A program made the translations under genes and the position numbers. From Vitrella brassicaformis CCMP3155 (Eukaryota; Protista; Chromerida): a stretch of DNA of 64,000 nt. This document shows positions 7,647 through 26,800 of the stretch, one piece after another (positions within the stretch are counted from its first letter, which is position 1; the number at the start of each line of letters is the position of its first letter). The notes beneath the pieces were generated by a model, which had not been told where the DNA came from, searched no databases, and saw only the letters and a program-made list of their open reading frames with translations. Where the stretch lies: positions 558,001 through 622,000 of the forward strand of contig CDMY01000227.1 in assembly GCA_001179505.1 (NCBI GenBank). The letters run 5' to 3'.

Positions 7647-9278
7647 TGGCCGTCCTCTACCAGGCTGACACGGACGAGCTGATGCTCACTGACGAGGAGA
7701 GGAAGGAGCTCGAGGAAGAGATTGCGGCCAACAGGAAGGCGCGCCAGAAAAAGTGGAAAAAGGGCAAGAAAAAGAAGAAGAACGAACCTCCTAACTTCAT
7801 CATCATGTTTTCCGACGACCAAAGATGGGATGCTGTCGGTACGGACACACACCTAACTATGTGGGTGGGTGGGTCGGTGGATGGATGGGTGGACGTGTGT
7901 GTGTCTGTGTGCAGGTCTGGTCCAGCAGCGGCTGTCTGATGAAGATCGTCTGTTTCCCTTCTTCATGAGCGAGACCCCCCAGATGGACCGCATGATCAAG
8001 TCAGGACGCATACACATACAGAGGCAGAGGATGTGTGTGTGTGCTGCAATCAATCAATGATTGCAGGGAAGGCGTGTTCTTTGAGAATACGTTCGTGACC
8101 GAACCGCTGTGCTCGCCGGCCAGGGCAGCCCTGATGAGCGGTCGGTGGGGCAGAGAGCACCGCACACACACAATCCTGTGCATACGTGTGTGTGTGTGTG
8201 TGTGTGTGCAGGCGAGTACGAGCATTTTCACGGTACGGATGCACAGAGAGAGAGAGAGAGAGAGGGNNNNNNNNNNNNNNNNNNNNNNNNNNNNNNNNNN
8301 NNNNNNNNNNNNNNNNNNNNNNNNNNNNNNNNNNNNNNNNNNNNNNNNNNNNNNNNNNNNNNNNNNNNNNNNNNNNNNNNNNNNNNNNNNNNNNNNNNNN
8401 NNNNNNNNNNNNNNNNNNNNNNNNNNNNNNNNNNNNNNNNNNNNNNNNNNNNNNNNNNNNNNNNNNNNNNNNNNNNNNNNNNNNNNNNNNNNNNNNNNNN
8501 NNNNNNNNNNNNNNNNNNNNNNNNNNNNNNNNNNNNNNNNNNNNNNNNNNNNNNNNNNNNNNNNNNCTGAGGGGTCGACCCACCATTCGTGCGTACGTAT
8601 ACATTGTGTGGTCACCCACCCATTCAGGTGTGTTGGACAATGTGCTCTCTAAGTATCCGGTGCCAGGGAAAGGCGACAACATCACGCGCAACAACGACAA
8701 CACCATAGGGGACATCCTCTCTCAACACGGATACAACACCGCATTCGTGGGCAAATGGTCCGGACGCCCGTTGGACGCCCGTGTGTGTGTGTGTGCGTGT
8801 GTGTGCGTGTGTCAAGGATGCACATCCGTGTTGTGTGTTTGTCTTTGCAGGCTGGGCTCCCCACAGCGAGAAAGGCCTGGGTTCGATTTCAGTGCGTCCT
8901 TTCTGGCCCAGGCAAGCGCATGTGGGTGGGTGGGTGGGTATCATGCACCTCATGTCATGTGCGTGTGTGTGTGTGTGGTCTATAAAGGGTTCGTATTACG
9001 ACGAGTATCAGTTCTACATCAACGAGGAGGAGCGGCCTGACGACAAGAGAAAGGGATGGATCGACGGTAGGCGCCTTCCTCCCCCCTCCGCCCTCCCCCA
9101 ACACACACGTCCATCCATCCATCCATCCATCTCTCTGTCTCTGTGTGTGTGTCTGTGTGTGTGTACAGATTGGTCGACGAGCTTCGCATTGCGGTTCCTG
9201 GAGAAGTACAGACACGAACCGTTCTTCCTCGTTGTCTCACTCAAGGTGACGCACGTGACGATAGGCACACACACATGT

Positions 9279-13399: not shown

Positions 13400-14892
13400 T
13401 TCACACATCATCGTCCAAACCACTCGACATCGCTCATCAATCCGACGCATGGGCACTCCTTTGTTCACACACGAAACCAACGCCCACACAGACACCGAAA
13501 AACCGGTCGTGCGCCAATCGTCACGGCGCGACCATTTTGTGTGGGCCACGGACAAGAACACACCAATGGCGCGAATGCAGCAAATGAGTGCACGAGGGCA
13601 AAAAAACACTACGCAGGACGCATCCAGCAAAGCAGGAGACACCGAAAAAGAGCCATGACCACAGATGTTCTCAGACACTTGACAGATGCCCTCATTCCCT
13701 CAGACCAATCGAACTGCATATTGCATATGTACTGCACTTACCGACAAAACCGCCGTGTGCCAGGTGCGACACAGCGAAGTGCGTTATGTGTGGGAACCAA
13801 AGAGGAACACATTATGATGATGGATGGACGGACGCAGCAGCAAAGACATACCACACACTGCACACACCGACAACCCAAAAAGCCCTCACGTCCTAGTGAG
13901 CCGCAGTCGCCTAGACATTCTCACCCCCAGCAGGAGACCTCCCCCCTCCCCCCCCTCCCCGCCAACTGCCTTAGTGTACAGGAAGTTCTTCTTGATTCAC
14001 ACATGATCGTCCAAACCGCAATCCGACACATAGGCACTCACCTGCGTAGCCCAGCTCTTCAAGTGTGCCAAAAAACCGTCGCGCTATCGTTCACAATATG
14101 TATGTCGCTTCACACACGCAGTACGTCCCGCCCCGGTCACACACGATACGAACCCCCCACACAGGCAGAGAACAACCGGTCGGTGCGCCAACCATGGCGC
14201 GACCATTTGCGTGGGCAACCAGCAAGAAGGCAGACAATGAGTCCAGGGGGGAAAAAACCCTGAGCAGGACCCCCAGCAAAGCAGGAGACACCGAAAAGAG
14301 CCATGACCACAGTATGTTCCTCAGACCCACTTCACAAATGCCATGATTCCCTCGGATTATAATCACCTGCATATATACTGCACTTACCGACAAACCGCCG
14401 TATGCCAGCGAACCAAAGAGGAACACATTAGGACATGGATGGATGGACGCAGCAAAGACAAACCACATACTGCATATACCGACAACGGACAAAGCCATCC
14501 TGCTCACGTCCTAGTGAGCCGAAATGCCCAGACATGCCCACCCCCAGCAGGAGACCTCCCCCTTCCCNNNNNNNNNNNNNNNNNNNNNNNNNNNNNNNNN
14601 NNNNNNNNNNNNNNNNNNNNNNNNNNNNNNNNNNNNNNNNNNNNNNNNNNNNNNNNNNNNNNNNNNNNNNNNNNNNNNNNNNNNNNNNNNNNNNNNNNNN
14701 NNNNNNNNNNNNNNNNNNNNNNNNNNNNNNNNNNNNNNNNNNNNNNNNNNNNNNNNNNNNNNNNNNNNNNNNNNNNNNNNNNNNNNNNNNNNNNNNNNNN
14801 NNNNNNNNNNNNNNNNNNNNNNNNNNNNNNNNNNNNNNNNNNNNNNNNNNNNNNNNNNNNNNNNNNNCCCCAACAGCCTTAGTGTACAGGAA
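13400..14892. repeat. Two diverged tandem copies of a roughly 600-650 bp non-coding unit (copy A about 13400-13985, copy B about 14000-14892, interrupted by a gap)
   Basis: Shared anchors in the same order: ATCGTCCAAACC (13409/14005); CCAGCAAAGCAGGAGACACCGAAAA(A)GAGCCATGACCACAG (13624/14273); GCACTTACCGACAAA (13733/14380); AACCAAAGAGGAACACATTA (13795/14411); CTCACGTCCTAGTGAGCCG; CCCCAGCAGGAGACCTCCCCC; GCCTTAGTGTACAGGAA. Confidence 0.85.
14568..14867. other. Assembly gap (300 N)
   Basis: Run of N. Confidence 0.99.
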
Positions 14893-15087: not shown

Positions 15088-16875
15088 TTGTTGCCGAGCC
15101 GCAGACGGAGAGGGATGCCCTTGTGCAGGATGGTACCGTAGGTCTCGCTGTCCCGGACCAGTGCCATGCCGCCCGGCAGGAACACCACACCCCCCTGGCC
15201 GTCTCTGTCCGTGTCAGATGAGTCACCACAGGGCGGCGATGGCGATGGGAAGCGGCCCGTCGGCAGCAGAGATGAGCAGGGCGTCGGGGACGATGCTGCT
15301 GCTGCTGCTGCACTCCTGCGGCCGATGGCGTCTCGCTGTTCTCTGTCCTCCTCCTGCCGGACCAGAAGGCTCAACGAACCGGTCGGCAGCCCGCCCAGTC
15401 CGCCCACACCGACATTGGCGGTCCTCAACACACCAAAGGGCGGCATCGGGAACATCGTGGGCCCGCATGCCTCGACATCAGGGTCGCCAGGCCAGTCTTC
15501 GTCCTCACTCTCCTCGTCCCTATCCCTCTTCTCGCGCCGCAGCTCACGACTGATGTGGTAGGTCGCGAGTGGACAGGGTCTTCTGTGGCCGGCAAGGGAG
15601 CTGGGTGGCGCCTCTGATGGACCGTATGGGCCACTGGGCGAGAAGGGGATCTGGCTGAATGGAGCGGTATGCACGGCCTGGCGGGGGGTGGTGTCGCTGT
15701 CGCGATGCGCTCGACGGACGCCAACGGCCTGAACCACAGCAATAACGAGATGCACTCATGTGATTTTCCTCTGCATCTGTGTGTCTTACTCGTTTGCATC
15801 GCGGCCATGGCGGCCTTTCCTGTCTTGTCGGCCGCCTCCTTGTCCTTGTCCGTCAATTCATCGCCCCCGGCCTTATGGGGCTCCTCCCTCTCTGATCCAT
15901 CAGCAGCGCTTTCAGCGCCCCCACTGCGGCCGTTTGCGCGTCTCGCCCCTTCCCTGGTCTTACGCACGGCTGACGGCGGCCCAAGACCGACGGGCGATGT
16001 GAGTCTGACGGTCTTGACGGCTTTGATGGCGAAGCATCGAACCAGGTGGCAGAGCTGCAGGATGTTCTGCATGGTCAGGGGCGGCGACTCACTCGGTAGC
16101 CGCAGATGGCCCAGTCGGTCGGTGGAGAGCAAGTGAAGCCACTTATCAAACACCTCGGGACGGAGACATGCGAAGTCCATTGCCACCAGATCACCGCCAG
16201 GCCCGCTGCTATTGTTGGTGTTGGTCCTGATGCTGATGGCGATGTCGCCCTTGTCGTCATCCACCTGCCCGCCCTTCTCCTTTTTGTCACACTGGCAGGG
16301 GCTGGCGTCTTCCGGGCAGAGTAGGGATGGCAGGATGGCGGGACCGCATCCAGCGGTGAGATAATCGCAGAGATGGGCTGCGGGTGCCTTGATGATGGCC
16401 CTCGGGGTGGGGAAAGAGGCGACAGGGGACGTGCAGTGGGAGGGGAAGATGCGGAAAGCTCCGGGGGACCACACAAACAGAGACACCGAATTCAGCTCCC
16501 CGGCTGCCAGAGATGGAACAGAGTGAATTTCAGGTGGCTGCAGCTCCCCCGCACCGACAGAGGCCCTCCAGCCGAACTCACTCAGCCGCAGCAGATGCGC
16601 TGCCAGAAGGTACGCTCCGGCTTCACGCGGCGACGGGAGCTGTTGCGGGAGAGGGAGGGAGGGGTGTCGGGGGGAGTGGAGAAGGGTGAGCGGGGCGCAC
16701 GGGGCGTGGCGGGGGCAGCACAGGAACAGGACCAGCAGCGAGAGGAGGCCGGCTCGTCGGCAACCGGGATGAAGTGCACGATAAGTGGGAGGGGCTGGTG
16801 GTAGGTGCCGTCGGAAAGCAGGATGGGATTCGGCCAAGCGGCCCACCGAGGCCGATAAGGTGGGAGAGTCGCCAT
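15018..16875 (-). CDS. Hypothetical protein with a divergent BTB/POZ-like domain and low-complexity C-terminus (few introns)
   Basis: AAAAAATGGCG start context at 16875. YLLAAHLLRLSEFGW and ACLRPEVFDKWLHLLSTDRL...LTMQNILQLCHLVRCFAIKAV resemble BTB N- and C-terminal motifs. Intron about 15718-15778 joins the C-terminal ORF. First splice not resolved. Confidence 0.55.
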
Positions 16876-16955
16876 TTTTTAATCAAGATTGGTGTCAAAA
16901 GCTCGCATTGGCCGTTGACCGTTGGGCCGCGGCACTGGCGTGCGGTCTTGTCGAG

Positions 16956-18104
16956 ATGGGTGCTGCATTATCGCGGTGTGACGACGCGTGCGCGCATCTG
17001 CTGGGCGCTGAGGAAGGAGAGATGCGCATTCCACCAAGGCGGCAGCGTCTGGAGGATCAGTTGTGGGAGATGTACCTGGACGACGAGAGGTGGCGAGGCC
17101 GCGTTACCCTCCCGCAGATGAATCTCAACACCCAGGAGATCCTGTGGGAGATCCTCGAGGGCACCCTCACGGCTCAGAGAGCGGCGACTCTCGTGACCGG
17201 GGCGGAACTCCGCGTGATCGTCCAGATAGGCGACAGCTACCAGTGGGGCCTCGTGGAGCTCATCATGGAGAGGCGGCCGCCGCTGCCTGAAGCCTGCGAG
17301 ATCATCGACCTCCTGCTCCAGGCAGGCGCCCCGGACGTCACTGCAGGAGACCCCAGCTCCCTCAAGCACGCCATCACCCGCGGCAAGTACGATGTGGCCA
17401 CCGTCATGCTGCGCCACGTCAATCAGAACAGCCCCAACCTGCTGCGGCTGCATCTCCTGCATGTGGTGGCGCGGGAGAACCACGACATCCAGCCCGCCGT
17501 GAAGCTGGCGATGGTGAGCAGCCTGGTGGAGCTGCACCCCGGCCAGCTCCTGGAGCGTGATCGCAACCATCGGCTGCCCATCCACGAATTCTGCCGCCAT
17601 CCTCTCAGCAGCGAGGCCGCACAGGAGGGGCTCATCGACCTGCTGGTGAGGGATGGCGACCGATACACCCTCAACACGACCGACAGGGCGGGAGCCACGC
17701 CCCTTCAGCTCGCCGCCTCCGACCTCAACGCCAGCGGTCTGCTGCGGGGACTGCTGCGGCACGGTGCCAATTTGTGGTCGGCAGGGGTGCCGAGAAGCAG
17801 CCGGCTGGGGAGGGTGGAATGGATGCAACGCGTCGTTGACGCGCATCTTGCCTACCTTCGACACAACTTGCTCCGGCTGGTCCGCCGCTCCCTCAACCGC
17901 GCGCTACAGCCACTTTGGTCCATCCGTGCGGCCACCGACAACGGGATTTTGAGGGAGATCAAGATGAAAATCGCCGGCTACATGTGCAACGCCATTCCGC
18001 TCTACCTGCCCGCCCCTCTCCGACACCGCATCAGCAAGATCACCCGCCTCTTCATCACGGCGGCCCTGGAGAGGACCACTGCAGGCCCCCAGGGAGCATG
18101 TTGA
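16956..18104 (+). CDS. Intronless ankyrin-repeat protein (about 382 aa) with MGxxxS N-terminus
   Basis: Ankyrin-like units SSLKHAITRGKYDVATVMLRH, RNHRLPIHEFC and TDRAGATPLQLAASDLNASGLLRGLLRHGANL. Likely start MGAALSRC at 16956. Confidence 0.8.
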   Translation: MGAALSRCDDACAHLLGAEEGEMRIPPRRQRLEDQLWEMYLDDERWRGRVTLPQMNLNTQEILWEILEGTLTAQRAATLVTGAELRVIVQIGDSYQWGLVELIMERRPPLPEACEIIDLLLQAGAPDVTAGDPSSLKHAITRGKYDVATVMLRHVNQNSPNLLRLHLLHVVARENHDIQPAVKLAMVSSLVELHPGQLLERDRNHRLPIHEFCRHPLSSEAAQEGLIDLLVRDGDRYTLNTTDRAGATPLQLAASDLNASGLLRGLLRHGANLWSAGVPRSSRLGRVEWMQRVVDAHLAYLRHNLLRLVRRSLNRALQPLWSIRAATDNGILREIKMKIAGYMCNAIPLYLPAPLRHRISKITRLFITAALERTTAGPQGAC

Positions 18105-18673
18105 TGTGTCCAAAATGCGCTTTGGATTCGCTGCCAACCATTGTGCTGTGTCGCTCAAGGAGCTGGTGGAGATGGCGGTCAGAAAGGAGGAGGGACTGTG
18201 GGGCGAGGCAGTGACGGTGCAGCTGCCGTGCAGGGACTTGCGAGTCGTGGCGTGTGGCAGCACGCATCACGCCGCGGCACAGTAGGAATGGGATGAGGTG
18301 TATGTATGGAGCTCAATGGGTAAAGTGAATCGGTACGGGCAGGGGGTCTGTGTGTGTGGTGGGTGGATGGCTGCGTGGCTGCGTGGGTGCTGTCATGTGA
18401 ATTCGGTGGGGGCAGGCAGGTATATATAAACACATACATATACGCGACACACCAGTGTCCGTTTGGTATGAGGGGGCAAGGAACGGCAGGTGCGAAAGGG
18501 CGTTTTCTTGGTGTGCTAGGTTAGGTGGTAGGTGGTGTGGACGACGAAGGCAAGTGCGATCGAGTGAATGGTTGCATATCAATTGACGCATGTACGACAC
18601 AGTCAATGTCCATGCTTCTTAAATGTCAATGTGCCATCCATCCATCCATGTGACCAGCCACTCAGCGACTCAG

Positions 18674-19153
18674 TCAGAGGAACCATAGTGATTTCGACAG
18701 CTTCTCGGACGGCAGCTTGTTTTTCAGTGCCGCCGTCACTTTCCGCGCACACCTGAGCCCAATCGATTCATTCTGCACGGAGTAGCTGCATGTGTGGCCC
18801 ATACGCTGCTTACGTCTCGGCATACTTGACAGGCGCCGGAACGCGGATTGGACCTGTCAAGCCATACGCACACACAGACAGATGAACACACACAGGTAGA
18901 CCACCCACCGGGCCAGTTTTGGTAGAGCATGGTGAGCTGCATTGTGAGCATGTGGAGGTTGCCCGCTGACAAGCCTGGCAGAAGGAGACAAGGAAACACG
19001 GGCAGGCAATGGCGACATGAGTGAGACTCGCCTTTGTCCCTACTCACTCCAGTTGTCGCTATGCACCACCTCATACTTGGTCGGCATCACCGTCCCTTCA
19101 CATAAGAGAACACGACAGCGCACCCTTGCTCTGCTGTGCTGTGTTGTCTCTCT

Positions 19154-19192
<39 letters not shown>

Positions 19193-20265
19193 ACCTTGCG
19201 TGACGGCCTGGTGGCAGCCAAAGAATGCGAATCGATTGTCCTCCGACTCAGTCACACCTATATACCATACACACTGCAGCTGCATCTCCCTATCTCATGC
19301 CTTTCTGTTGGTCGGTACATACATTTGTCAAAGATGGTAAGAGGGGGCGGATTGCTGAAATGGCCAAGACGGCGTGGGTCTGGAAAGGAAAATCTGTTGA
19401 GCACAAGACAAGACAGACATACAATCACACATGGATCACGACAGAAGACAGACACATGGATGGATGGATGGATTCATCACCGCTGGCAGGAATTTTCGTA
19501 GTGATGATGAAGGCGATTTCTGGAGAGTAGTCTGCACGAATCTGCTTGAACGTCTCGGTGATGCTCGGCAGCTCGACCGCAAGCGCAGCCGCCTTCTGAC
19601 TATCACTCAGGCCACACCTGTATGTTACACAGGCATATACACATACACGAACAGACGTGAGTGAACATGGCAGACCTATAGACGATAACGCGCTCGGGCC
19701 TGCGGCAGAGGGCTGACTGATAGACGGTCACGGCATCTGCACATTCGTTCAGCATGCCATGCGGCTGGGCTGACCAGCCGCCGATGCCCCACACGACCTT
19801 TGACGAATGCTTGAAGCGTGTGGGGCTCGATGATGTCCTTGAAGCCGTCCTTGATGGTGACCCTAGTGATGTACTCGAGGTACAGCTCGTCACGAGCCGC
19901 AGAGAGCACAAAGACGGTCTTGTCTGCATACACACACATATAGATTCGCACACATGCGTCGCGCATCTCTGTGCTCTGCTGTGCTGTGCTGTGTGAGCCG
20001 TTGCCTTCGGTCTTCCTGACGTCGATTCCGACCACCATCACAGGCTGTATCCAGACAAGCGAAACTTGCACAGACACGTGTGTCAGCAGTGGTGTCAGAC
20101 CTTGTCGTGTATCCTCCTCGTGTCAAGTGCCCAAGCAGCGCCGCCGAGCTTGCAGACCATTTGGGCGACCAAACTGAACACGGCGGGTGGGACGTTGGGT
20201 TCCTGCGACAGTGAATCGAGGGTTCTTGGCCTCACCATCTGCGTGCATGCACATGCCGACGCATA

Positions 20266-20300
<35 letters not shown>

Positions 20301-23300
20301 TTTTTGTCTGGTTGGCTGGCTGTATGTATGGATGGGTAGCAACATGACCTGGCTGTGTGCTACTGGCGTGCCGCCCTTGCCGCATGTCAGCCGCGCCTTG
20401 ATGGCATTGTACACACCCGTCTGCTCTTCCTCCAAACTGTCCGTCCATACACCGACACAAAGGCAAAGACAAAGATGCATAAAGATGGATGGAGGTGTGC
20501 TGTCGTGGGCTATACTCACTGGGGAAGTATCCCAAGGACGAGGGCGCCTTTTTCTGCATCAGTGATGTCGCGGATCTTCTCGGACAGCTCGGCCCAGACG
20601 CTCTCGTCCCGGATGGCGTCCCACCAGCTGGGCAGCTCTGATTTCACAACACACGGACACACACATGTGGATGCATCGAACATGCCGGGAGCTGCACGGT
20701 GGACCGACAACGTCGGCATCTTCGTATTTGATGGCCCACGCTGCAAACCAAATCGAAGATACACATTGCTCGTGCCGCATCGGTGTGTGCTGGTCACTTG
20801 CACTCACCCTGGCACACTCGTTGGATGCTGTCGAGAAGTCTGCGCGCCGTTGGTCCGCAGTCCTCTTGATAGATCACTATCAAGCCGTCAAGGTCCGCCT
20901 GCATGACCGAATCGACGTACACATGCACGTGCATCAGTCCTCCCTCCCTCGCCCCTCTCTGTGCTGTGCTGTGCTGTGCTGTGCTGACCGGTTTGACGAC
21001 TGAGTCGAGTCGGATGTAGCCTGTGTTGGGCGGCGGGGCCTTGAAGCCGGGCGGCTCCGCACTCCCCTCCCCGCGCGGCCCCTCCAGAGGACGCAATGCC
21101 TCTCGTGACGTGAAATACCTAAAGCTGGCTCCGTCACCCTCAAGCAGCTGCTGCCCTGCACACATCAATGCATGCACACATAGAGGTCCATTCATACACA
21201 TATGAATGGCTGATCTCTCTCTCGTCCTTGGGCTGGCTCACCGCAGACCAATTTTTAGACTCTCCGATATGTGGATGCCGTACTGACGCAGGAGACCTGA
21301 CACCGGCAGACACACATGTGCTGACTGATGTGTAGCTGGCCCCTTCAGTGCGTATGTCTGCGTGGTATGCCTGCGGCTGCTGGGCTGTTCATGAGGCAAG
21401 TGGCGAGCTGCTGGCTCTCCCTGAGCCGGTCGCCAGGCGACATGCGGCAGAGCCGGGCGATCTCGTCGCTGAGCTGGGCGCTGTTGCGAATCGAGTCGTC
21501 GAGGCCTGCTCACACAGGAGACCAGATGCATCCATACCATGTCGTCTTTTGTGTGTGGAGAGAGGGGCTTCACCTGTGAGCGCAATCATCTGTGAAGGGA
21601 GGATGCTCTCGTGTACAACTGCCTGCGTGCCGTCGGCTTGCTTCTTCCTCCGACGGCATACGACTAGACAGCGCAAGACAGGGGCCAATATGATGTGTGT
21701 AGGCTGGGTGGGTGTTGGCCTGTGTGTGGGGTTGACTGACCCAGCGGTTGGTTTGGTTCGAGTTTGATATTGTATCTGCTGAAATAGTACTCGCCGACCT
21801 TCCACTCTCGGCCGTTCTTGTCACGGAATGTTCGGGTGGCGGGAGTGTAGTGGAACTCAATCTGCATCAACACATCCACACACGGCAACCATCCAGCCGC
21901 GGGTGTACTTGTGTCATGTGTATATGATATCTATTGCCTCGTCGATGGCGTGGAGCTGTCGCTTGCTGTCGCTCTCCGGCCGCTTGCCTGTGCGAAAGAC
22001 ACACAAATTCTGTTGCCTGTATCGGTGAGCCTTGAGCTAGTGCAGTACGTACGTATAGTGTGACTACGCGCCGGCCTTTGAACTTCTGATTGATCCGGTC
22101 GGCGAAGTTCTGGAGAGTGCCGTTGAAACCGCTCTGATTGATAGAAGTGCATGGAAAACACCCGTGCAGTGGAGCTGCGTGCGAGTGTCTGTGGCGGGNN
22201 NNNNNNNNNNNNNNNNNNNNNNNNNNNNNNNNNNNNNNNNNNNNNNNNNNNNNNNNNNNNNNNNNNNNNNNNNNNNNNNNNNNNNNNNNNNNNNNNNNNN
22301 NNNNNNNNNNNNNNNNNNNNNNNNNNNNNNNNNNNNNNNNNNNNNNNNNNNNNNNNNNNNNNNNNNNNNNNNNNNNNNNNNNNNNNNNNNNNNNNNNNNN
22401 NNNNNNNNNNNNNNNNNNNNNNNNNNNNNNNNNNNNNNNNNNNNNNNNNNNNNNNNNNNNNNNNNNNNNNNNNNNNNNNNNNNNNNNNNNNNNNNNNNGG
22501 GCGGGAGGGTGACCCGTAGTCGCCGCAGGACGTGTAGGAAGCTCTCGTCATGGACAATGCGATGCGTGCGGTCGACCTGTACACACACAGACACACAGAC
22601 ACACGGCGAGCACACCGGCCTTGAAATGTGCAGCAGATTCTTGTCGTCGTGTCGTGTCGTGTTGTGTCGTGTGTTGCACTTGCCCGAAAGTAGAGCCGCC
22701 CCTCGAGGCTCAGCAAGGACGTGATGAAGCCTGGAAGGAGCCTGACTATTCTCTGGATGACGGTGCCGCTGTGCTGCGTGTCGTTCAACATGTTGGGCAG
22801 AAACGATTGACGACCAGCGGACTGAAGCTGCACACACCAGCCATTTGTGTCAGAGAGGGGTGGAGGTGGGTGCATACATTGCACTGCACTGCTTACATGT
22901 AGTTGTCCCATCGCCCTTCTCACAGCGCACTCGATGTATTCGTTGACGTCAGTGAGCACGTCCTTCTCTCGAGCTGACATGGCATGGCACACACCACACG
23001 CGCACCAATACCAAGAGTGAGGGCTCTGCGTGCCGTCTCACTTACATGAGTTGAGTGAGTGTTTTCGTGTGAGTGTGATCGTTTGCTCTTGCTGGCTGGT
23101 GCTCTCCTCGGGCAGTGGTGGGGCGGTGACGGTGATGGGCTCGGCGTCGATCGACGGATTGTCCATGTGTGTCAATGACAAGTGGCACACAAACAGCTTC
23201 ATCCCCTCACACCGGTACCCACAGCAGGGCGCTTGTGTTGGCGTCAAAGCCCAACGCACTCGCTATCTGAGTCACAAGATAGGACACACATGCAACGCAC

Positions 23301-23552
23301 ACAGAAGCGCACTCGGCCTCGCGTACATCGTACCTGCCTCTGGTTGGTATAGATCAGTCGACGCTGCTTGTGTGAGTCGGACACAGAGGGTGGAATGCTG
23401 TTGACAGACAGACAGAATCAAACAAGCAATGAATGACTACTCGTGTGCGCCACTCACTCACTTGCGGCAAAGAGATGGACTCTCATGCCCTCATCCAGCT
23501 TCATCCGGTAGAGGTTGGTATTCGCCAACACCGAAGATGGGACGCTCGCCAT
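18674..23552 (-). CDS. PIWI: Piwi-clade Argonaute (N-L1-PAZ-L2-MID-PIWI), predicted slicer-inactive; about 25 exons
   Basis: ANTNLYRMKL (N), LLPGFITSLLSLEGRLYFRVDRTHRIV (L1), KFKGRRVVTLY...EYYFSRYNIKLEPNQPL (PAZ), GLDDSIRNSAQL...RMSPGDR (L2), VYNAIKARL..SQ..MVCKLGG (MID), VVGIDV, VIVYRCGLSDSQ, NPPPLT, QGTVMPTKYEV, LYQNWPGPIRVPAPVKYAE, and terminal KLSKSLWFL* typical of the Piwi clade. Confidence 0.9.
22199..22498. other. Assembly gap (300 N), probably intronic in the Piwi gene
   Basis: Run of N. Confidence 0.99.
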
Positions 23553-23881
23553 GGCCGCCCGACTCATGACGGAAGGAGGAAAGAAGGGAGCGGAATGACG
23601 AAAGAGCCCACAATCAATGTTGACTCAATGGACGTGTGAGCGGTGTGAAGCACGTCAAAGTCACAGATCTTGAATGTTGCGTCATTGATGGAGTGACATC
23701 GCTTGTGAGCATTTACGTTTTGGCGAGAGGAATTGCAGAGGGGAGCACACTGGACAGGGCCACGCACACACGCATGGTTGGTCAGTCTCCACGCACACAC
23801 CCATCGTTTCATTCCCTTCCCCTCTGCTGTGCTGTGCTATCTACGTAAGTCTGCCGTCCGTCCATCCATTCACTCAGCGAC

Positions 23882-26800
23882 TCACGACCCCTTCGGCACG
23901 GCCGCAGCAGCCGCTGCTGCAGCCCCGCCACCGCCCCCGCCCTGCTGCTGCTGGCGGCCGAAGCTGAAGGCCACCTCGTTGCCACCGCCCCCTCCCGCCT
24001 TGCGGGGCGCCACCGCCGCCTGCTGCTGCTGCTGCTGGTATCTGGGCTCGGTCTTGTTGGCTTTGTGCAGTGCCTCCTTGTGTTTGCGCCTGTGTCGCCA
24101 GTGCTTGACGTCCTCCTGGAAGTCGGTCTCGGGGCTGAAGATGTTCCGGCACATGAAGTTCTTCTTGATCCAACGCGACTGATACACACACACACACACA
24201 CACAGCCATTACACATAGAGGTGGGGCGATGTGAGAATGGGATGAGTGTGTGTGTCTGCGCGTCGGTCGGTTCGGGCAACCTGCAGCAGTTGCTCGAGGG
24301 AGGGGCGACATGAAGGGTCCTGAGTGAAAGAAAGAGACAGAGAAGACTTGCATAGCTGGATAGATGGGTGTCCCTTTCCACNNNNNNNNNNNNNNNNNNN
24401 NNNNNNNNNNNNNNNNNNNNNNNNNNNNNNNNNNNNNNNNNNNNNNNNNNNNNNNNNNNNNNNNNNNNNNNNNNNNNNNNNNNNNNNNNNNNNNNNNNNN
24501 NNNNNNNNNNNNNNNNNNNNNNNNNNNNNNNNNNNNNNNNNNNNNNNNNNNNNNNNNNNNNNNNNNNNNNNNNNNNNNNNNNNNNNNNNNNNNNNNNNNN
24601 NNNNNNNNNNNNNNNNNNNNNNNNNNNNNNNNNNNNNNNNNNNNNNNNNNNNNNNNNNNNNNNNNNNNNNNNNNNNNNNNNGGGAGGGCAGGGCAGGGGG
24701 CTCTCTTCTGGCGGCCATACGCGTGTGTGTGTGTATATATGTCAGCCACCTGCCAACCCACCTTGTGCAGGCACATATCGATGAACTCGCGCAACTCGGT
24801 GCTGAACTTGTCCGGGTACTGAATGCAGACAGACAGACAGACAGACAGACGTCCCGTGCGTTGCGTCTGGTGTGTGGTTGGCCACGTATGTATGTGTGTG
24901 TGTGTCTGTGTGGTTGGTCAAGTACCTGCTGTCTGAGGTTTTTGATTGCCTCTTTCTGCGCGTCCTCGTCGGGATCGGCCTTGAACGGCGCGTGCGATGA
25001 CTGGTCATCACACACACACACACACACAAAACACACATGGATGAATCGGTGTGTGTGGCGGTGCATCTGTGGGTGCGTACACAGAGTTCGTATGCGAGTA
25101 CGCCGAGTGCCCATATGTCGGCCTCAGCACCATAACGCTCCTTGCGCAGCATCTCGGGCGGGATGTAGTCTGAAGCAATGAAATGAAAGAAACGAACAGC
25201 TCTTCTTCATCTAGTCTTCTGTGTGTGTGGAGGGGTGTGGTGCGGTGTTGACCTGCGGTGCCGCAGAATGTCTTGCGGCCGCGGGGCCGGGCGCGCGAGT
25301 GGTCCGACCAGCCGAAGTCAGCCTGATGCATCAAGACACACACCAAGACACACATCAAGAGAGCGGCTTGGTCTGCATGGGTGTGTATGTGTTTATGTGT
25401 GTATTGTTTGTGGGTATTGATTATGATGTGTGCTACGAGTTTGAGGCAGTGCATCGATTTCTGAAGGATACACACAGGCAGGGAGGCGTGTGAGCCTGTG
25501 CTTGTGTCATGTGTTGTTGGCGGCATGTGTGTATTCAGTGCCGACCCCGCCATCGAACGAGCCTACGAGGATGTTCTCCTGCAGCCGACACGTGCACACA
25601 GCCTAGCCTTGGGAGAGAGTGCTGTGCTGCGCTGTGTGATGCATTGTGGTGGTCTGGTCTTGTTACTGTCTGTCTGTCTGTCTGCCTTTGTATTGTGCGT
25701 ACTGGTTTGATGTCTCTGTGGATGATGTGTTTGGAGTGGAGGTACTTCAACGCCCAGATGATCTGCTTCATGTACCTAAACTCAACACAACACACAACAC
25801 ACAAGACGTCCCCTCGAGTGTGTGCCTGTGCGTCTGTGTGTCTCTGTGTGTGGTGCCCATCCATCCATCCATCCATCCATTCATCAGGCTGACCCGGCGG
25901 CCTGGGTCTCTCCGAGTCCGTCGGCTGGTATCTTGTGGAAGAGGTCGCCGTCGGGCATGCACTCCAACACCAAGTAGATCTTCTTGTCGTCCCAGAAAAA
26001 CGTCAACATGCTACACACACACACACACACACACATCGACATATATGGGCACACAGGGGGAGGGAGGGAGGGAGGGAGGGTGAAGTGGGTGTGAATGGTT
26101 CTGCGGGTGTGGGTGCGATACCGGAGTATGTTTGGGTGTCTGAGGTGCCCCTGATTCTCTATCTCTACGACTACGTTCTTCTCCGCGCCCTCCCTGATGC
26201 CAACCAACCAACCACACACACGCCCAGACACAGAGAGGGAGGGAGGGAGGGAGGGGGAGAGAGGGGTGTATGTGTGTGGTGCGTGTGTGTTGTCCTTGTG
26301 TGCCAGCTGACATACGAGATGATCTGCGACTTGGTCATGATTTTGATGGCCACGATGTAGCCCGTGCGGCGCTCGCGACCAACGTACACCGCACCGTAGC
26401 GGCCGTCACCCTACACACAAGTCAACGCACGAGACACATCCGCCCGTCCATGTGTGCATTTGTGTGTGTGCGCGCGAGTACCAGTTTGCATCCTACGTCG
26501 AAGTCCTGCATGGTCCAGCGGCCCTGCGGGTCGCAGTGTATCATGTCCGCCGACGCCACGCTGTCAGACATCTGGCCGGGGGTCGCATACAGGTGGCCAC
26601 CCACACGCGACTGCAACGAACTCCCTACACCGCTGCACAAACGACACACACATACACACACACACACACACACGAAACCGGCCGAGAAAGGGCTGCTGGA
26701 TGGATGGATGGATGGGCTTACGCACCCAGCGGCTGCAAAGGCAAAGAGGGGTAGGGCGGAAAGAGGAAGAGATGGAAAGTTTGTCGATGGGTGTGCGGTG

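What the first reader, a model, noticed from the sequence alone, without database searches (positions are those of the whole stretch)
18674..23552. Full-length Piwi-clade Argonaute with intact guide pocket but a broken slicer tetrad
Seen: MID 5'-phosphate pocket residues are retained (YNAIK, SQ, CKLGG) and the first catalytic Asp is present (GIDV, 20021-20023). The third tetrad residue is Cys (YRCG instead of YRDG, codon 19614-19616) and the fourth is Glu (YAE instead of YAH, 18816-18818). The N-terminus is short and has no RG/RA repeats. Established: NWxGxIRVPAP and the hydrophobic FL* terminus mark the Piwi clade, and slicing requires the DEDH/DEDD tetrad. Ciliates use Piwi-clade proteins, whereas Plasmodium lacks RNAi. 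Inference: a non-slicing Piwi in a photosynthetic relative of apicomplexans points to an uncharacterised small-RNA-guided pathway, such as chromatin, repeat or translational silencing.
Basis: partly seen in the sequence, partly recalled or inferred. Interest (0 to 1): 0.7.

Follow-up and report, generated by a model that had tools for sequence, protein, structure and literature searches.

The report
Slicer-dead Piwi gene, frame-broken transcript
This is a real, transcribed Piwi-type small-RNA-binding gene of the alga Vitrella brassicaformis that has lost two RNA-cutting residues. The only available transcript cannot be read through to the end, so it is probably an ordinary, possibly decaying, member of a known kind of non-cutting Argonaute.

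Summary
The gene is the deposited Vitrella brassicaformis CCMP3155 protein CEL95457.1 (A0A0G4EGT3, "Piwi domain-containing protein"). It maps at 100% identity in 26 exons on the minus strand, 23166 to 18677. A public cDNA contig confirms both disputed junctions, YR|CG and YAE|T.

The first catalytic Asp is kept. The third tetrad residue is Cys and the fourth is Glu. The MID pocket residues Y, K, Q and K are present. Solved Piwi-clade proteins score 100-155 bits against it; human Ago2 scores about 54.

The assembly gap lies inside an intron. Alignment to mouse MIWI runs across that junction without a break, so no coding sequence is missing there.

"Full-length" is not established. The cDNA leaves two introns unspliced. 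Its junction 19481|19393 reads the conserved NPPP exon out of frame, which gives an early stop. The deposited model hides this by using a weak donor that the cDNA does not support, so 25 of its residues are out-of-frame translation. An in-frame isoform through a cryptic acceptor at 19379 remains possible.

Earlier notes of this scan report many similar slicer-dead Piwi copies elsewhere in this genome.

The parts
18674..23166 (-). Deposited coding sequence of CEL95457.1 / A0A0G4EGT3 (769 aa, 26 exons), including stop codon 18676-18674
   Evidence: P0008 maps codon for codon at 100% identity. The record is CDMY01000227.1 of GCA_001179505.1 and is 100% identical to the window. Pfam gives Piwi 5.3e-38 and PAZ 1.1e-11.
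23219..23567 (-). Possible extra N-terminal exons (23567-23458, 23397-23334, 23266-23219) upstream of the deposited start. They contain no RG/RA repeats.
   Evidence: Read by eye with GT-AG sites and consistent phases. No Pfam or PDB support. This is inference only.
22134..22513 (-). Intron that contains the assembly gap 22199-22498
   Evidence: Donor cgg|GTCACC and acceptor atcag|AGC are both phase 0. The MIWI 9s0z_B alignment runs straight across the junction RRLR|SGFNG with only a 2-residue gap.
21465..22112 (-). PAZ domain exons (protein residues 143-264)
   Evidence: Pfam PF02170 at 1.1e-11. Isolated PAZ structures of Piwi-like 1 and 2 also match. Coordinates.
20149..20411 (-). MID 5'-phosphate pocket: Y458 and K462 (YNAIK, 20411-20397), Q478 (20351-20349), K508 (CKLGG, 20151-20149)
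   Evidence: Aligned residue for residue with MILI: YGAIK, SQ, CKLGG. Coordinates.
20021..20023 (-). First catalytic Asp (D532, GIDV)
   Evidence: Aligns with GMDV of MILI and GIDC of MIWI. Coordinates.
19826..19837 (-). Glutamate-finger position, which is ambiguous: D567 or E570 in FKDIIE
   Evidence: HMMER aligns the Glu of MIWI GQELVD with D567. E570 lies at the canonical distance of about 32 residues from Cys602.
19614..19616 (-). Third tetrad position is Cys (C602, YRCG)
   Evidence: Aligns with position 669 of human Ago2 and with YRDG of MIWI. The junction is confirmed by cDNA.
18816..18818 (-). Fourth tetrad position is Glu (E743, YAE)
   Evidence: Aligns with YAH of Piwi-A, MIWI and MILI, and with YAK of Drosophila Piwi. 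The junction is confirmed by cDNA.
19319..19393 (-). Exon x21, where the frames conflict. The cDNA and the deposited model read DFPFQTHAVLAISAIRPLLPSLTNV. The conserved frame reads RFSFPDPRRLGHFSNPPPLTIFDK.
   Evidence: The cDNA junction is 19481|19393 and the cDNA donor is 19323|19322, giving TNV followed by a stop. The conserved frame adds about 13 bits against Piwi structures. R-F at K+5/K+6 matches MIWI, Ephydatia Piwi and P0007. The model's donor at 19319 scores 0.0 bits against 6.4 for the cDNA donor.
19924..20004 (-). Model intron x17|x18, which has a GC donor and is retained in the cDNA (in frame)
   Evidence: The donor scores -2.2 bits.
19717..19797 (-). Stretch left unspliced in the cDNA. 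The model's intron is 19774-19717. An alternative 61-nt intron, 19797-19737, fits Piwi alignments better.
   Evidence: Retention shifts the frame to a stop at YRL*.
17282..20672 (-). Stretch covered by the public cDNA contig L001, with 11 GT-AG introns removed
   Evidence: JGI 3300017148 Ga0186167_102855. MMETSP Transcript_15541 has the same structure.

Best explanation
This is one paralogue of the Piwi-clade Argonaute genes of Vitrella brassicaformis (CEL95457.1). By descent it encodes a small-RNA-guided binder. The MID pocket would hold the guide's 5' phosphate and the PAZ domain its 3' end. The PIWI active site cannot carry out canonical two-metal cleavage, because the third Asp is Cys and the fourth His is Glu. 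Such a protein would silence by binding targets and recruiting partners, not by slicing; that mechanism is inferred from known non-slicing Piwis. This particular copy is transcribed but is most likely disabled or decaying. The assembled mRNA joins exon x20 to exon x21 one base out of register with the conserved frame and stops 26 codons later. It also keeps two introns, one of which has a weak GC donor. The deposited full-length protein exists only because the gene predictor chose an unsupported donor, which turns a conserved exon into 25 out-of-frame residues.
For: Identity with the deposited gene. Domains. Piwi-clade scores of 100-155 bits (MIWI 155, Siwi 100) against about 54 for Ago2. Structural neighbours are Piwi-like 1 and Aubergine clusters at TM 0.8. 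Tetrad and pocket residues. Frame break: the cDNA reads IPAS+DFPFQ...TNV and then stops. The other frame of the same exon carries the conserved NPPP motif and the R-F pair at K+5/K+6 that is seen in MIWI, Ephydatia Piwi and the relative P0007. Retained introns. The model's donor is weak.
Against: All 26 exons are open, and the 122 codons after the break are still well conserved (68.9 bits to Ephydatia Piwi). So the lesion is either recent or bypassed. A cryptic acceptor at 19379 (ttccag|AC) would keep the frame, and it scores better (6.1 bits) than the acceptor the cDNA uses (3.2 bits). The cDNA contig starts inside an intron and may partly reflect unprocessed RNA. The two assemblies probably come from the same reads. 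No raw reads could be examined.
Confidence: 0.55

Rival explanations
1. It is a functional non-slicing Piwi. A minor or condition-specific isoform uses the acceptor at 19379, giving IPAS-D-PRRLGHFSNPPP, and removes the two retained introns. The result would be a complete PAZ-MID-PIWI protein that binds guides and silences without cutting.
For: Reading frames are open and motifs are conserved throughout, up to the exact Piwi-type C-terminus. The acceptor at 19379 scores higher than the one the cDNA uses. The gene is transcribed and mostly spliced.
Against: No cDNA shows that junction. That isoform would lose the R-F pair conserved at K+5/K+6 in all compared Piwis. The GC donor of intron x17|x18 is very weak, and that intron is retained.
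Confidence: 0.32
2. The frame break is a sequencing or assembly artefact and the gene is simply intact.
For: A single missing base near GCCAGCG|GT would be enough to cause it. The scaffold is a draft with gaps.
Against: The genome assembly and the transcriptome contig agree base for base across both exons and the junction. Two transcript assemblies give the same ORF end.
Confidence: 0.08
3. The protein still slices, using a non-canonical site in which Cys and Glu replace Asp and His.
For: An acidic residue (Glu) stands at the fourth position.
Against: The third Asp is a direct metal ligand in Argonautes (established knowledge). Cys is not a usual Mg2+ ligand. No such active Argonaute is known to me.
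Confidence: 0.02

Closest known systems
Mouse MIWI (Piwi-like protein 1, PDB 9s0z)
   Same: It is the best solved match: 155 bits, E 2.8e-44, aligned from the L0/L1 region to the last residue. The PAZ-MID-PIWI order, the MID pocket motifs and the NWPGxIRVPAP...L C-terminus are all shared.
   Different: MIWI has the full D-E-D-H tetrad and slices. Here positions 3 and 4 are Cys and Glu. There are no N-terminal RG repeats. The transcript is frame-broken.
Drosophila Piwi (PDB 6kr6) and other slicer-independent Piwis such as mouse MIWI2
   Same: It is a Piwi-clade protein with a non-His residue at the fourth tetrad position; 6kr6 shows YAK where this gene has YAE. These proteins work by binding nascent targets and recruiting silencing factors, which is established knowledge.
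   Different: Drosophila Piwi keeps the third Asp. No partner proteins, piRNA-like guides or nuclear role are shown for the Vitrella gene.
Ciliate Piwi-clade proteins (Tetrahymena Twi, Paramecium Ptiwi)
   Same: They are alveolate Piwi-clade Argonautes in expanded families, some members of which lack catalytic residues. This is from my own knowledge and was not tested here.
P0007, a marine metatranscriptome fragment (MERC ERR1712083)
   Same: It is 40% identical over 82 residues and has the identical NWPGPIRVPAPVKYA motif. It also has a non-His residue (Asn) at the fourth position.
   Different: It is only a 115-residue fragment of unknown organism. It keeps the K-R-x-x-x-R-F motif in frame, whereas this gene's cDNA does not.

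Membership tests
Argonaute superfamily (eukaryotic long Argonautes) | PAZ and PIWI domains in the same protein, in that order | tested here: met
   Pfam gives PAZ 1.1e-11 (residues 143-264) and Piwi 5.3e-38 (residues 475-751) on the deposited protein. Per-exon hits are consistent with this.
Argonaute superfamily (eukaryotic long Argonautes) | MID pocket residues Y, K, Q and K for the guide's 5' phosphate | tested here: met
   YNAIK, SQ and CKLGG align with YGAIK, SQ and CKLGG of MILI.
Piwi clade (as opposed to the Ago clade) | Closer to Piwi-clade than to Ago-clade proteins over the whole length | tested here: met
   MIWI 155 bits, Ephydatia Piwi 141, MILI 130, Drosophila Piwi 119 and Siwi 100, against human Ago2 at about 54. 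The nearest structural clusters are Piwi-like 1 and Aubergine.
Piwi clade (as opposed to the Ago clade) | Placement inside the Piwi clade in a phylogenetic tree that includes Ago, WAGO and ciliate sequences | not tested
   No set of homologues could be fetched. The three word searches returned only fragments of this same gene and P0007.
Piwi clade (as opposed to the Ago clade) | N-terminal RG/RA (methyl-arginine) motifs for Tudor partners; this is typical of animal PIWIs and does not define the clade | tested here: not met
   There are none in the deposited protein or in the possible upstream exons.
Slicer-competent Argonautes (DEDH/DEDD tetrad) | Asp at tetrad positions 1 and 3, Glu finger at position 2, and His or Asp at position 4 | tested here: not met
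   Position 1 is Asp (D532). Position 2 is ambiguous (D567 or E570). Position 3 is Cys (C602). Position 4 is Glu (E743).
Intact protein-coding gene | The transcript can be read in the conserved frame from start to stop | tested here: not met
   The cDNA L001 and MMETSP Transcript_15541 retain two introns. They join 19481 to 19393 out of the conserved frame and stop after TNV.

The most novel reading that the evidence does not exclude
Vitrella keeps an expanded set of slicer-dead Piwi proteins that serve a small-RNA-guided, cleavage-independent silencing pathway, for example of repeats or chromatin, in a free-living relative of apicomplexans. This copy would contribute to it through an in-frame isoform that uses the acceptor at 19379.
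Probability: 0.3. Interest if true: 0.5.

Novelty: new member of a known kind. Interest (0 to 1): 0.25.

Why it matters
Chromerids are the closest photosynthetic relatives of apicomplexan parasites, and some apicomplexans have lost RNAi. The state of chromerid Argonautes therefore bears on how that loss happened. This gene adds one more Piwi-clade copy that has lost its cutting site. It also shows that the public protein model (CEL95457.1) contains 25 residues of out-of-frame translation and that its N-terminus and one intron are doubtful, so it should not be used uncritically in phylogenies or structure work. On its own the gene does not open a new question. It is ordinary, and perhaps decaying.

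Tried and rejected
- Per-exon Pfam and PDB searches gave only sub-threshold but consistent Piwi/PAZ hits.
- I spent the one exhaustive protein search on the YRCG exon. It found only a cDNA-derived fragment of this gene and three repeat-protein false positives.
- The search for related loci in metagenome contigs found nothing.
- The three word-based homologue searches returned only fragments of this same gene plus P0007, because of the length filter. No paralogue or outgroup set could be assembled, so no tree was built.
- The N-terminal exons got no support from Pfam or PDB.
- Literature searches found no paper on chromerid Piwi or Argonaute genes, and none on GC-AG intron frequency in Vitrella.
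- I considered programmed -1 frameshifting at the break and rejected it by eye, because I saw no slippery heptamer.
- I considered that the YRCG or YAE readings came from mis-splicing and rejected that, because the cDNA confirms both junctions.
- My own joined exon models (the N-terminal extension and the frame-corrected exon x21) were used only inside a local script to check frames. They were not sent to any search or folding tool.
Full report
**What is there**

The minus strand between about 23.2 kb and 18.7 kb holds a gene of many small exons. Single exons gave weak but specific hits: Pfam Piwi at 3.3e-5 and PAZ at 1.1e-4. The YRCG exon aligned with human Ago2 at YR(D669)GVSEGQ.

**Identity**

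An exhaustive search with the YRCG exon found an 89-residue protein, P0001, that is already spliced across YR|CG. It lies on a 2,658-base JGI transcript contig, L001. L001 matches the window at 100% identity, with introns removed.

A cluster look-up of its C-terminal ORF brought up P0008. This is CEL95457.1 / UniRef100_A0A0G4EGT3, "Piwi domain-containing protein", from Vitrella brassicaformis CCMP3155, 769 residues. P0008 maps codon for codon onto the window in 26 exons, 23166..18677, with stop at 18676-18674. The genomic record CDMY01000227.1 (GCA_001179505.1) is 100% identical to window 15674-26166, including the same N gaps. So the organism is settled and the protein is already public.

**The gap (tested first, as asked)**

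The gap 22199-22498 falls inside model intron 22513..22134. The donor is cgg|GTCACC and the acceptor is atcag|AGC, both phase 0. In the alignment to mouse MIWI (9s0z_B), the sequence on the two sides...FLHVLRRLR|SGFNGTLQNF..., runs on with only a two-residue gap. No coding sequence appears to be missing there. No transcript covers this junction, so this rests on the alignment and on the splice phases.

All are correct:
- Y458 and K462 (YNAIK, 20411-20397), Q478 (20351-20349) and K508 (CKLGG, 20151-20149) align with YGAIK, SQ and CKLGG of MILI.
- D532 (GIDV, 20023-20021) is the first catalytic Asp.
- C602 (19616-19614) stands at the third position.
- E743 (18818-18816) stands at the fourth, aligned with YAH of Piwi-A, MIWI and MILI and with YAK of Drosophila Piwi.
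- The glutamate-finger position is ambiguous. HMMER puts the Glu of MIWI opposite D567 of FKDIIE, while E570 lies at the canonical spacing from position 3.

The cDNA removes intron 19675..19618 and intron 18813..18753 at canonical GT-AG sites. This proves both the YR|CG and the YAE|T junctions. Alternative splicing that would restore YRDG or YAH is not seen.

**Clade**

The deposited protein scores 155 bits to MIWI, 141 to Ephydatia Piwi, 130 to MILI, 119 to Drosophila Piwi and 100 to Siwi. It scores about 54 to human Ago2. The last 97-122 residues align to the final residue of Piwi proteins only. The ESM Atlas model of this protein (pTM 0.73) is nearest to Piwi-like 1 and Aubergine clusters, at TM about 0.8. 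I could not build a tree, because no homologue set could be fetched.

**Why "full-length" does not hold**

The cDNA L001 and the independent MMETSP assembly Transcript_15541 (P0005, P0009) differ from the deposited model in three places.

1. Model intron 20004-19924 has a GC donor, aag|GCAACG. It scores -2.2 bits on a small matrix built from this gene's own introns. It is retained in the cDNA, in frame.
2. The next intron is unspliced in the cDNA. This shifts the frame to a stop (…YRL*). The model's choice here (19774-19717) gives GRVGHRRL. A 61-base intron (19797-19737) would instead give DAVTVYQ, which lines up without gaps with Ephydatia Piwi and MIWI.
3. This is the most important difference. 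The cDNA joins 19481 to 19393 and leaves exon x21 at 19323|19322, so the frame reads IPAS-DFPFQTHAVLAISAIRPLLPSLTNV and then stops.

The other frame of that same exon reads RFSFPDPRRLGHFSNPPPLTIFDK. That frame carries the conserved NPPP..D motif and adds about 13 bits against Piwi structures (56.1 rising to 68.9 bits). It also places R-F exactly at K+5/K+6, as in MIWI (KRVNARFF), Ephydatia Piwi (KRITTRIF) and the relative P0007 (KRIVHRF). So the ancestral reading ran IPAS-RFSF, and one base has been lost near the junction.

The deposited model regains the frame only by using a donor four bases further on (19319|19318). That donor scores 0.0 bits against 6.4 for the cDNA donor, and the cDNA does not use it. 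Residues 647-671 of CEL95457.1 are therefore out-of-frame translation.

**What keeps the question open**

The 122 codons after the break are intact and well conserved. A cryptic acceptor at 19379 (ttccag|AC, 6.1 bits, against 3.2 for the acceptor used) would give an in-frame product, IPAS-D-PRRLGHFSNPPP, lacking RFSFP. The cDNA contig begins inside an intron (20672), so it partly reflects unprocessed RNA.

**Reading**

The most likely explanation (0.55) is a transcribed, slicer-dead Piwi paralogue that has recently been disabled or is decaying. The main rival (0.32) is a working non-slicing Piwi made from a minor in-frame isoform. In either case the protein type is a guide-binding, non-cleaving Argonaute, which is a known kind (Drosophila Piwi, MIWI2, human Ago1 and Ago4). 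That such a protein acts by recruiting partners is inference from those systems, not something shown here.

**Context from this scan**

Earlier notes report about 25 Piwi findings in this genome. They include other slicer-dead copies, some frame-broken; a copy with the same D-E-C-E pattern on another scaffold; a DEDD copy; and Dicer-like genes. I confirmed the organism and found comparable damage in this copy. I did not test the other copies.

My own joined exon models were used only in a local frame check. They were not sent to any search or fold tool.

Noticed in passing
window 22683, 21937, 21370 and 20004 (first intron bases, minus strand): Four of the 25 introns in the deposited model have GC donors (cgg|GCAAGT, gag|GCAATA, cag|GCATAC, aag|GCAACG). 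The only one covered by cDNA is retained. This is either a lineage habit of GC-AG introns or donor decay in this copy.
   Followed up: partly
window 19127-19148, 19972-19993, 20957-20988, 23825-23841 (minus strand): An (ACAGC)n pentanucleotide repeat sits in three introns of this gene and just upstream of it. There are 14 matches in the window against 0.03 expected by chance.
   Followed up: partly
window 16785-18104 (+) and 17282-18676 (-): A convergent single-exon ORF has weak ankyrin-repeat hits. The Piwi cDNA contig runs 1.4 kb past the stop codon into this ORF, so either the two transcripts overlap at their 3' ends or the unstranded assembly merged them.
   Followed up: partly
P0007 (MERC ERR1712083_1036400): A marine metatranscriptome fragment carries the identical NWPGPIRVPAPVKYA motif and has Asn at the fourth tetrad position. 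Relatives with a non-His fourth residue therefore exist in ocean plankton.
   Followed up: partly
window 22052-22045 and 19322-19315 (minus strand): There are tandem GT donors four bases apart (GTACGTAC and GTATGTAC) at two exon ends. The choice between them sets the reading frame. The model uses the second donor in both cases, while the cDNA uses the first at 19322.
   Followed up: partly
window 23219-23567 (minus strand): About 75 codons upstream of the deposited start look like the first strands of a Piwi N domain (…VLANTNLYRM…LFAASDIPPSV…). The public protein may therefore be N-terminally truncated. No database support was obtained.
   Followed up: partly
window 8267-8566, 14568-14867, 24382-24681: There are three further 300-N assembly gaps in the window. 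The one at 24382-24681 lies about 0.8 kb upstream of the possible start of this gene.
   Followed up: no
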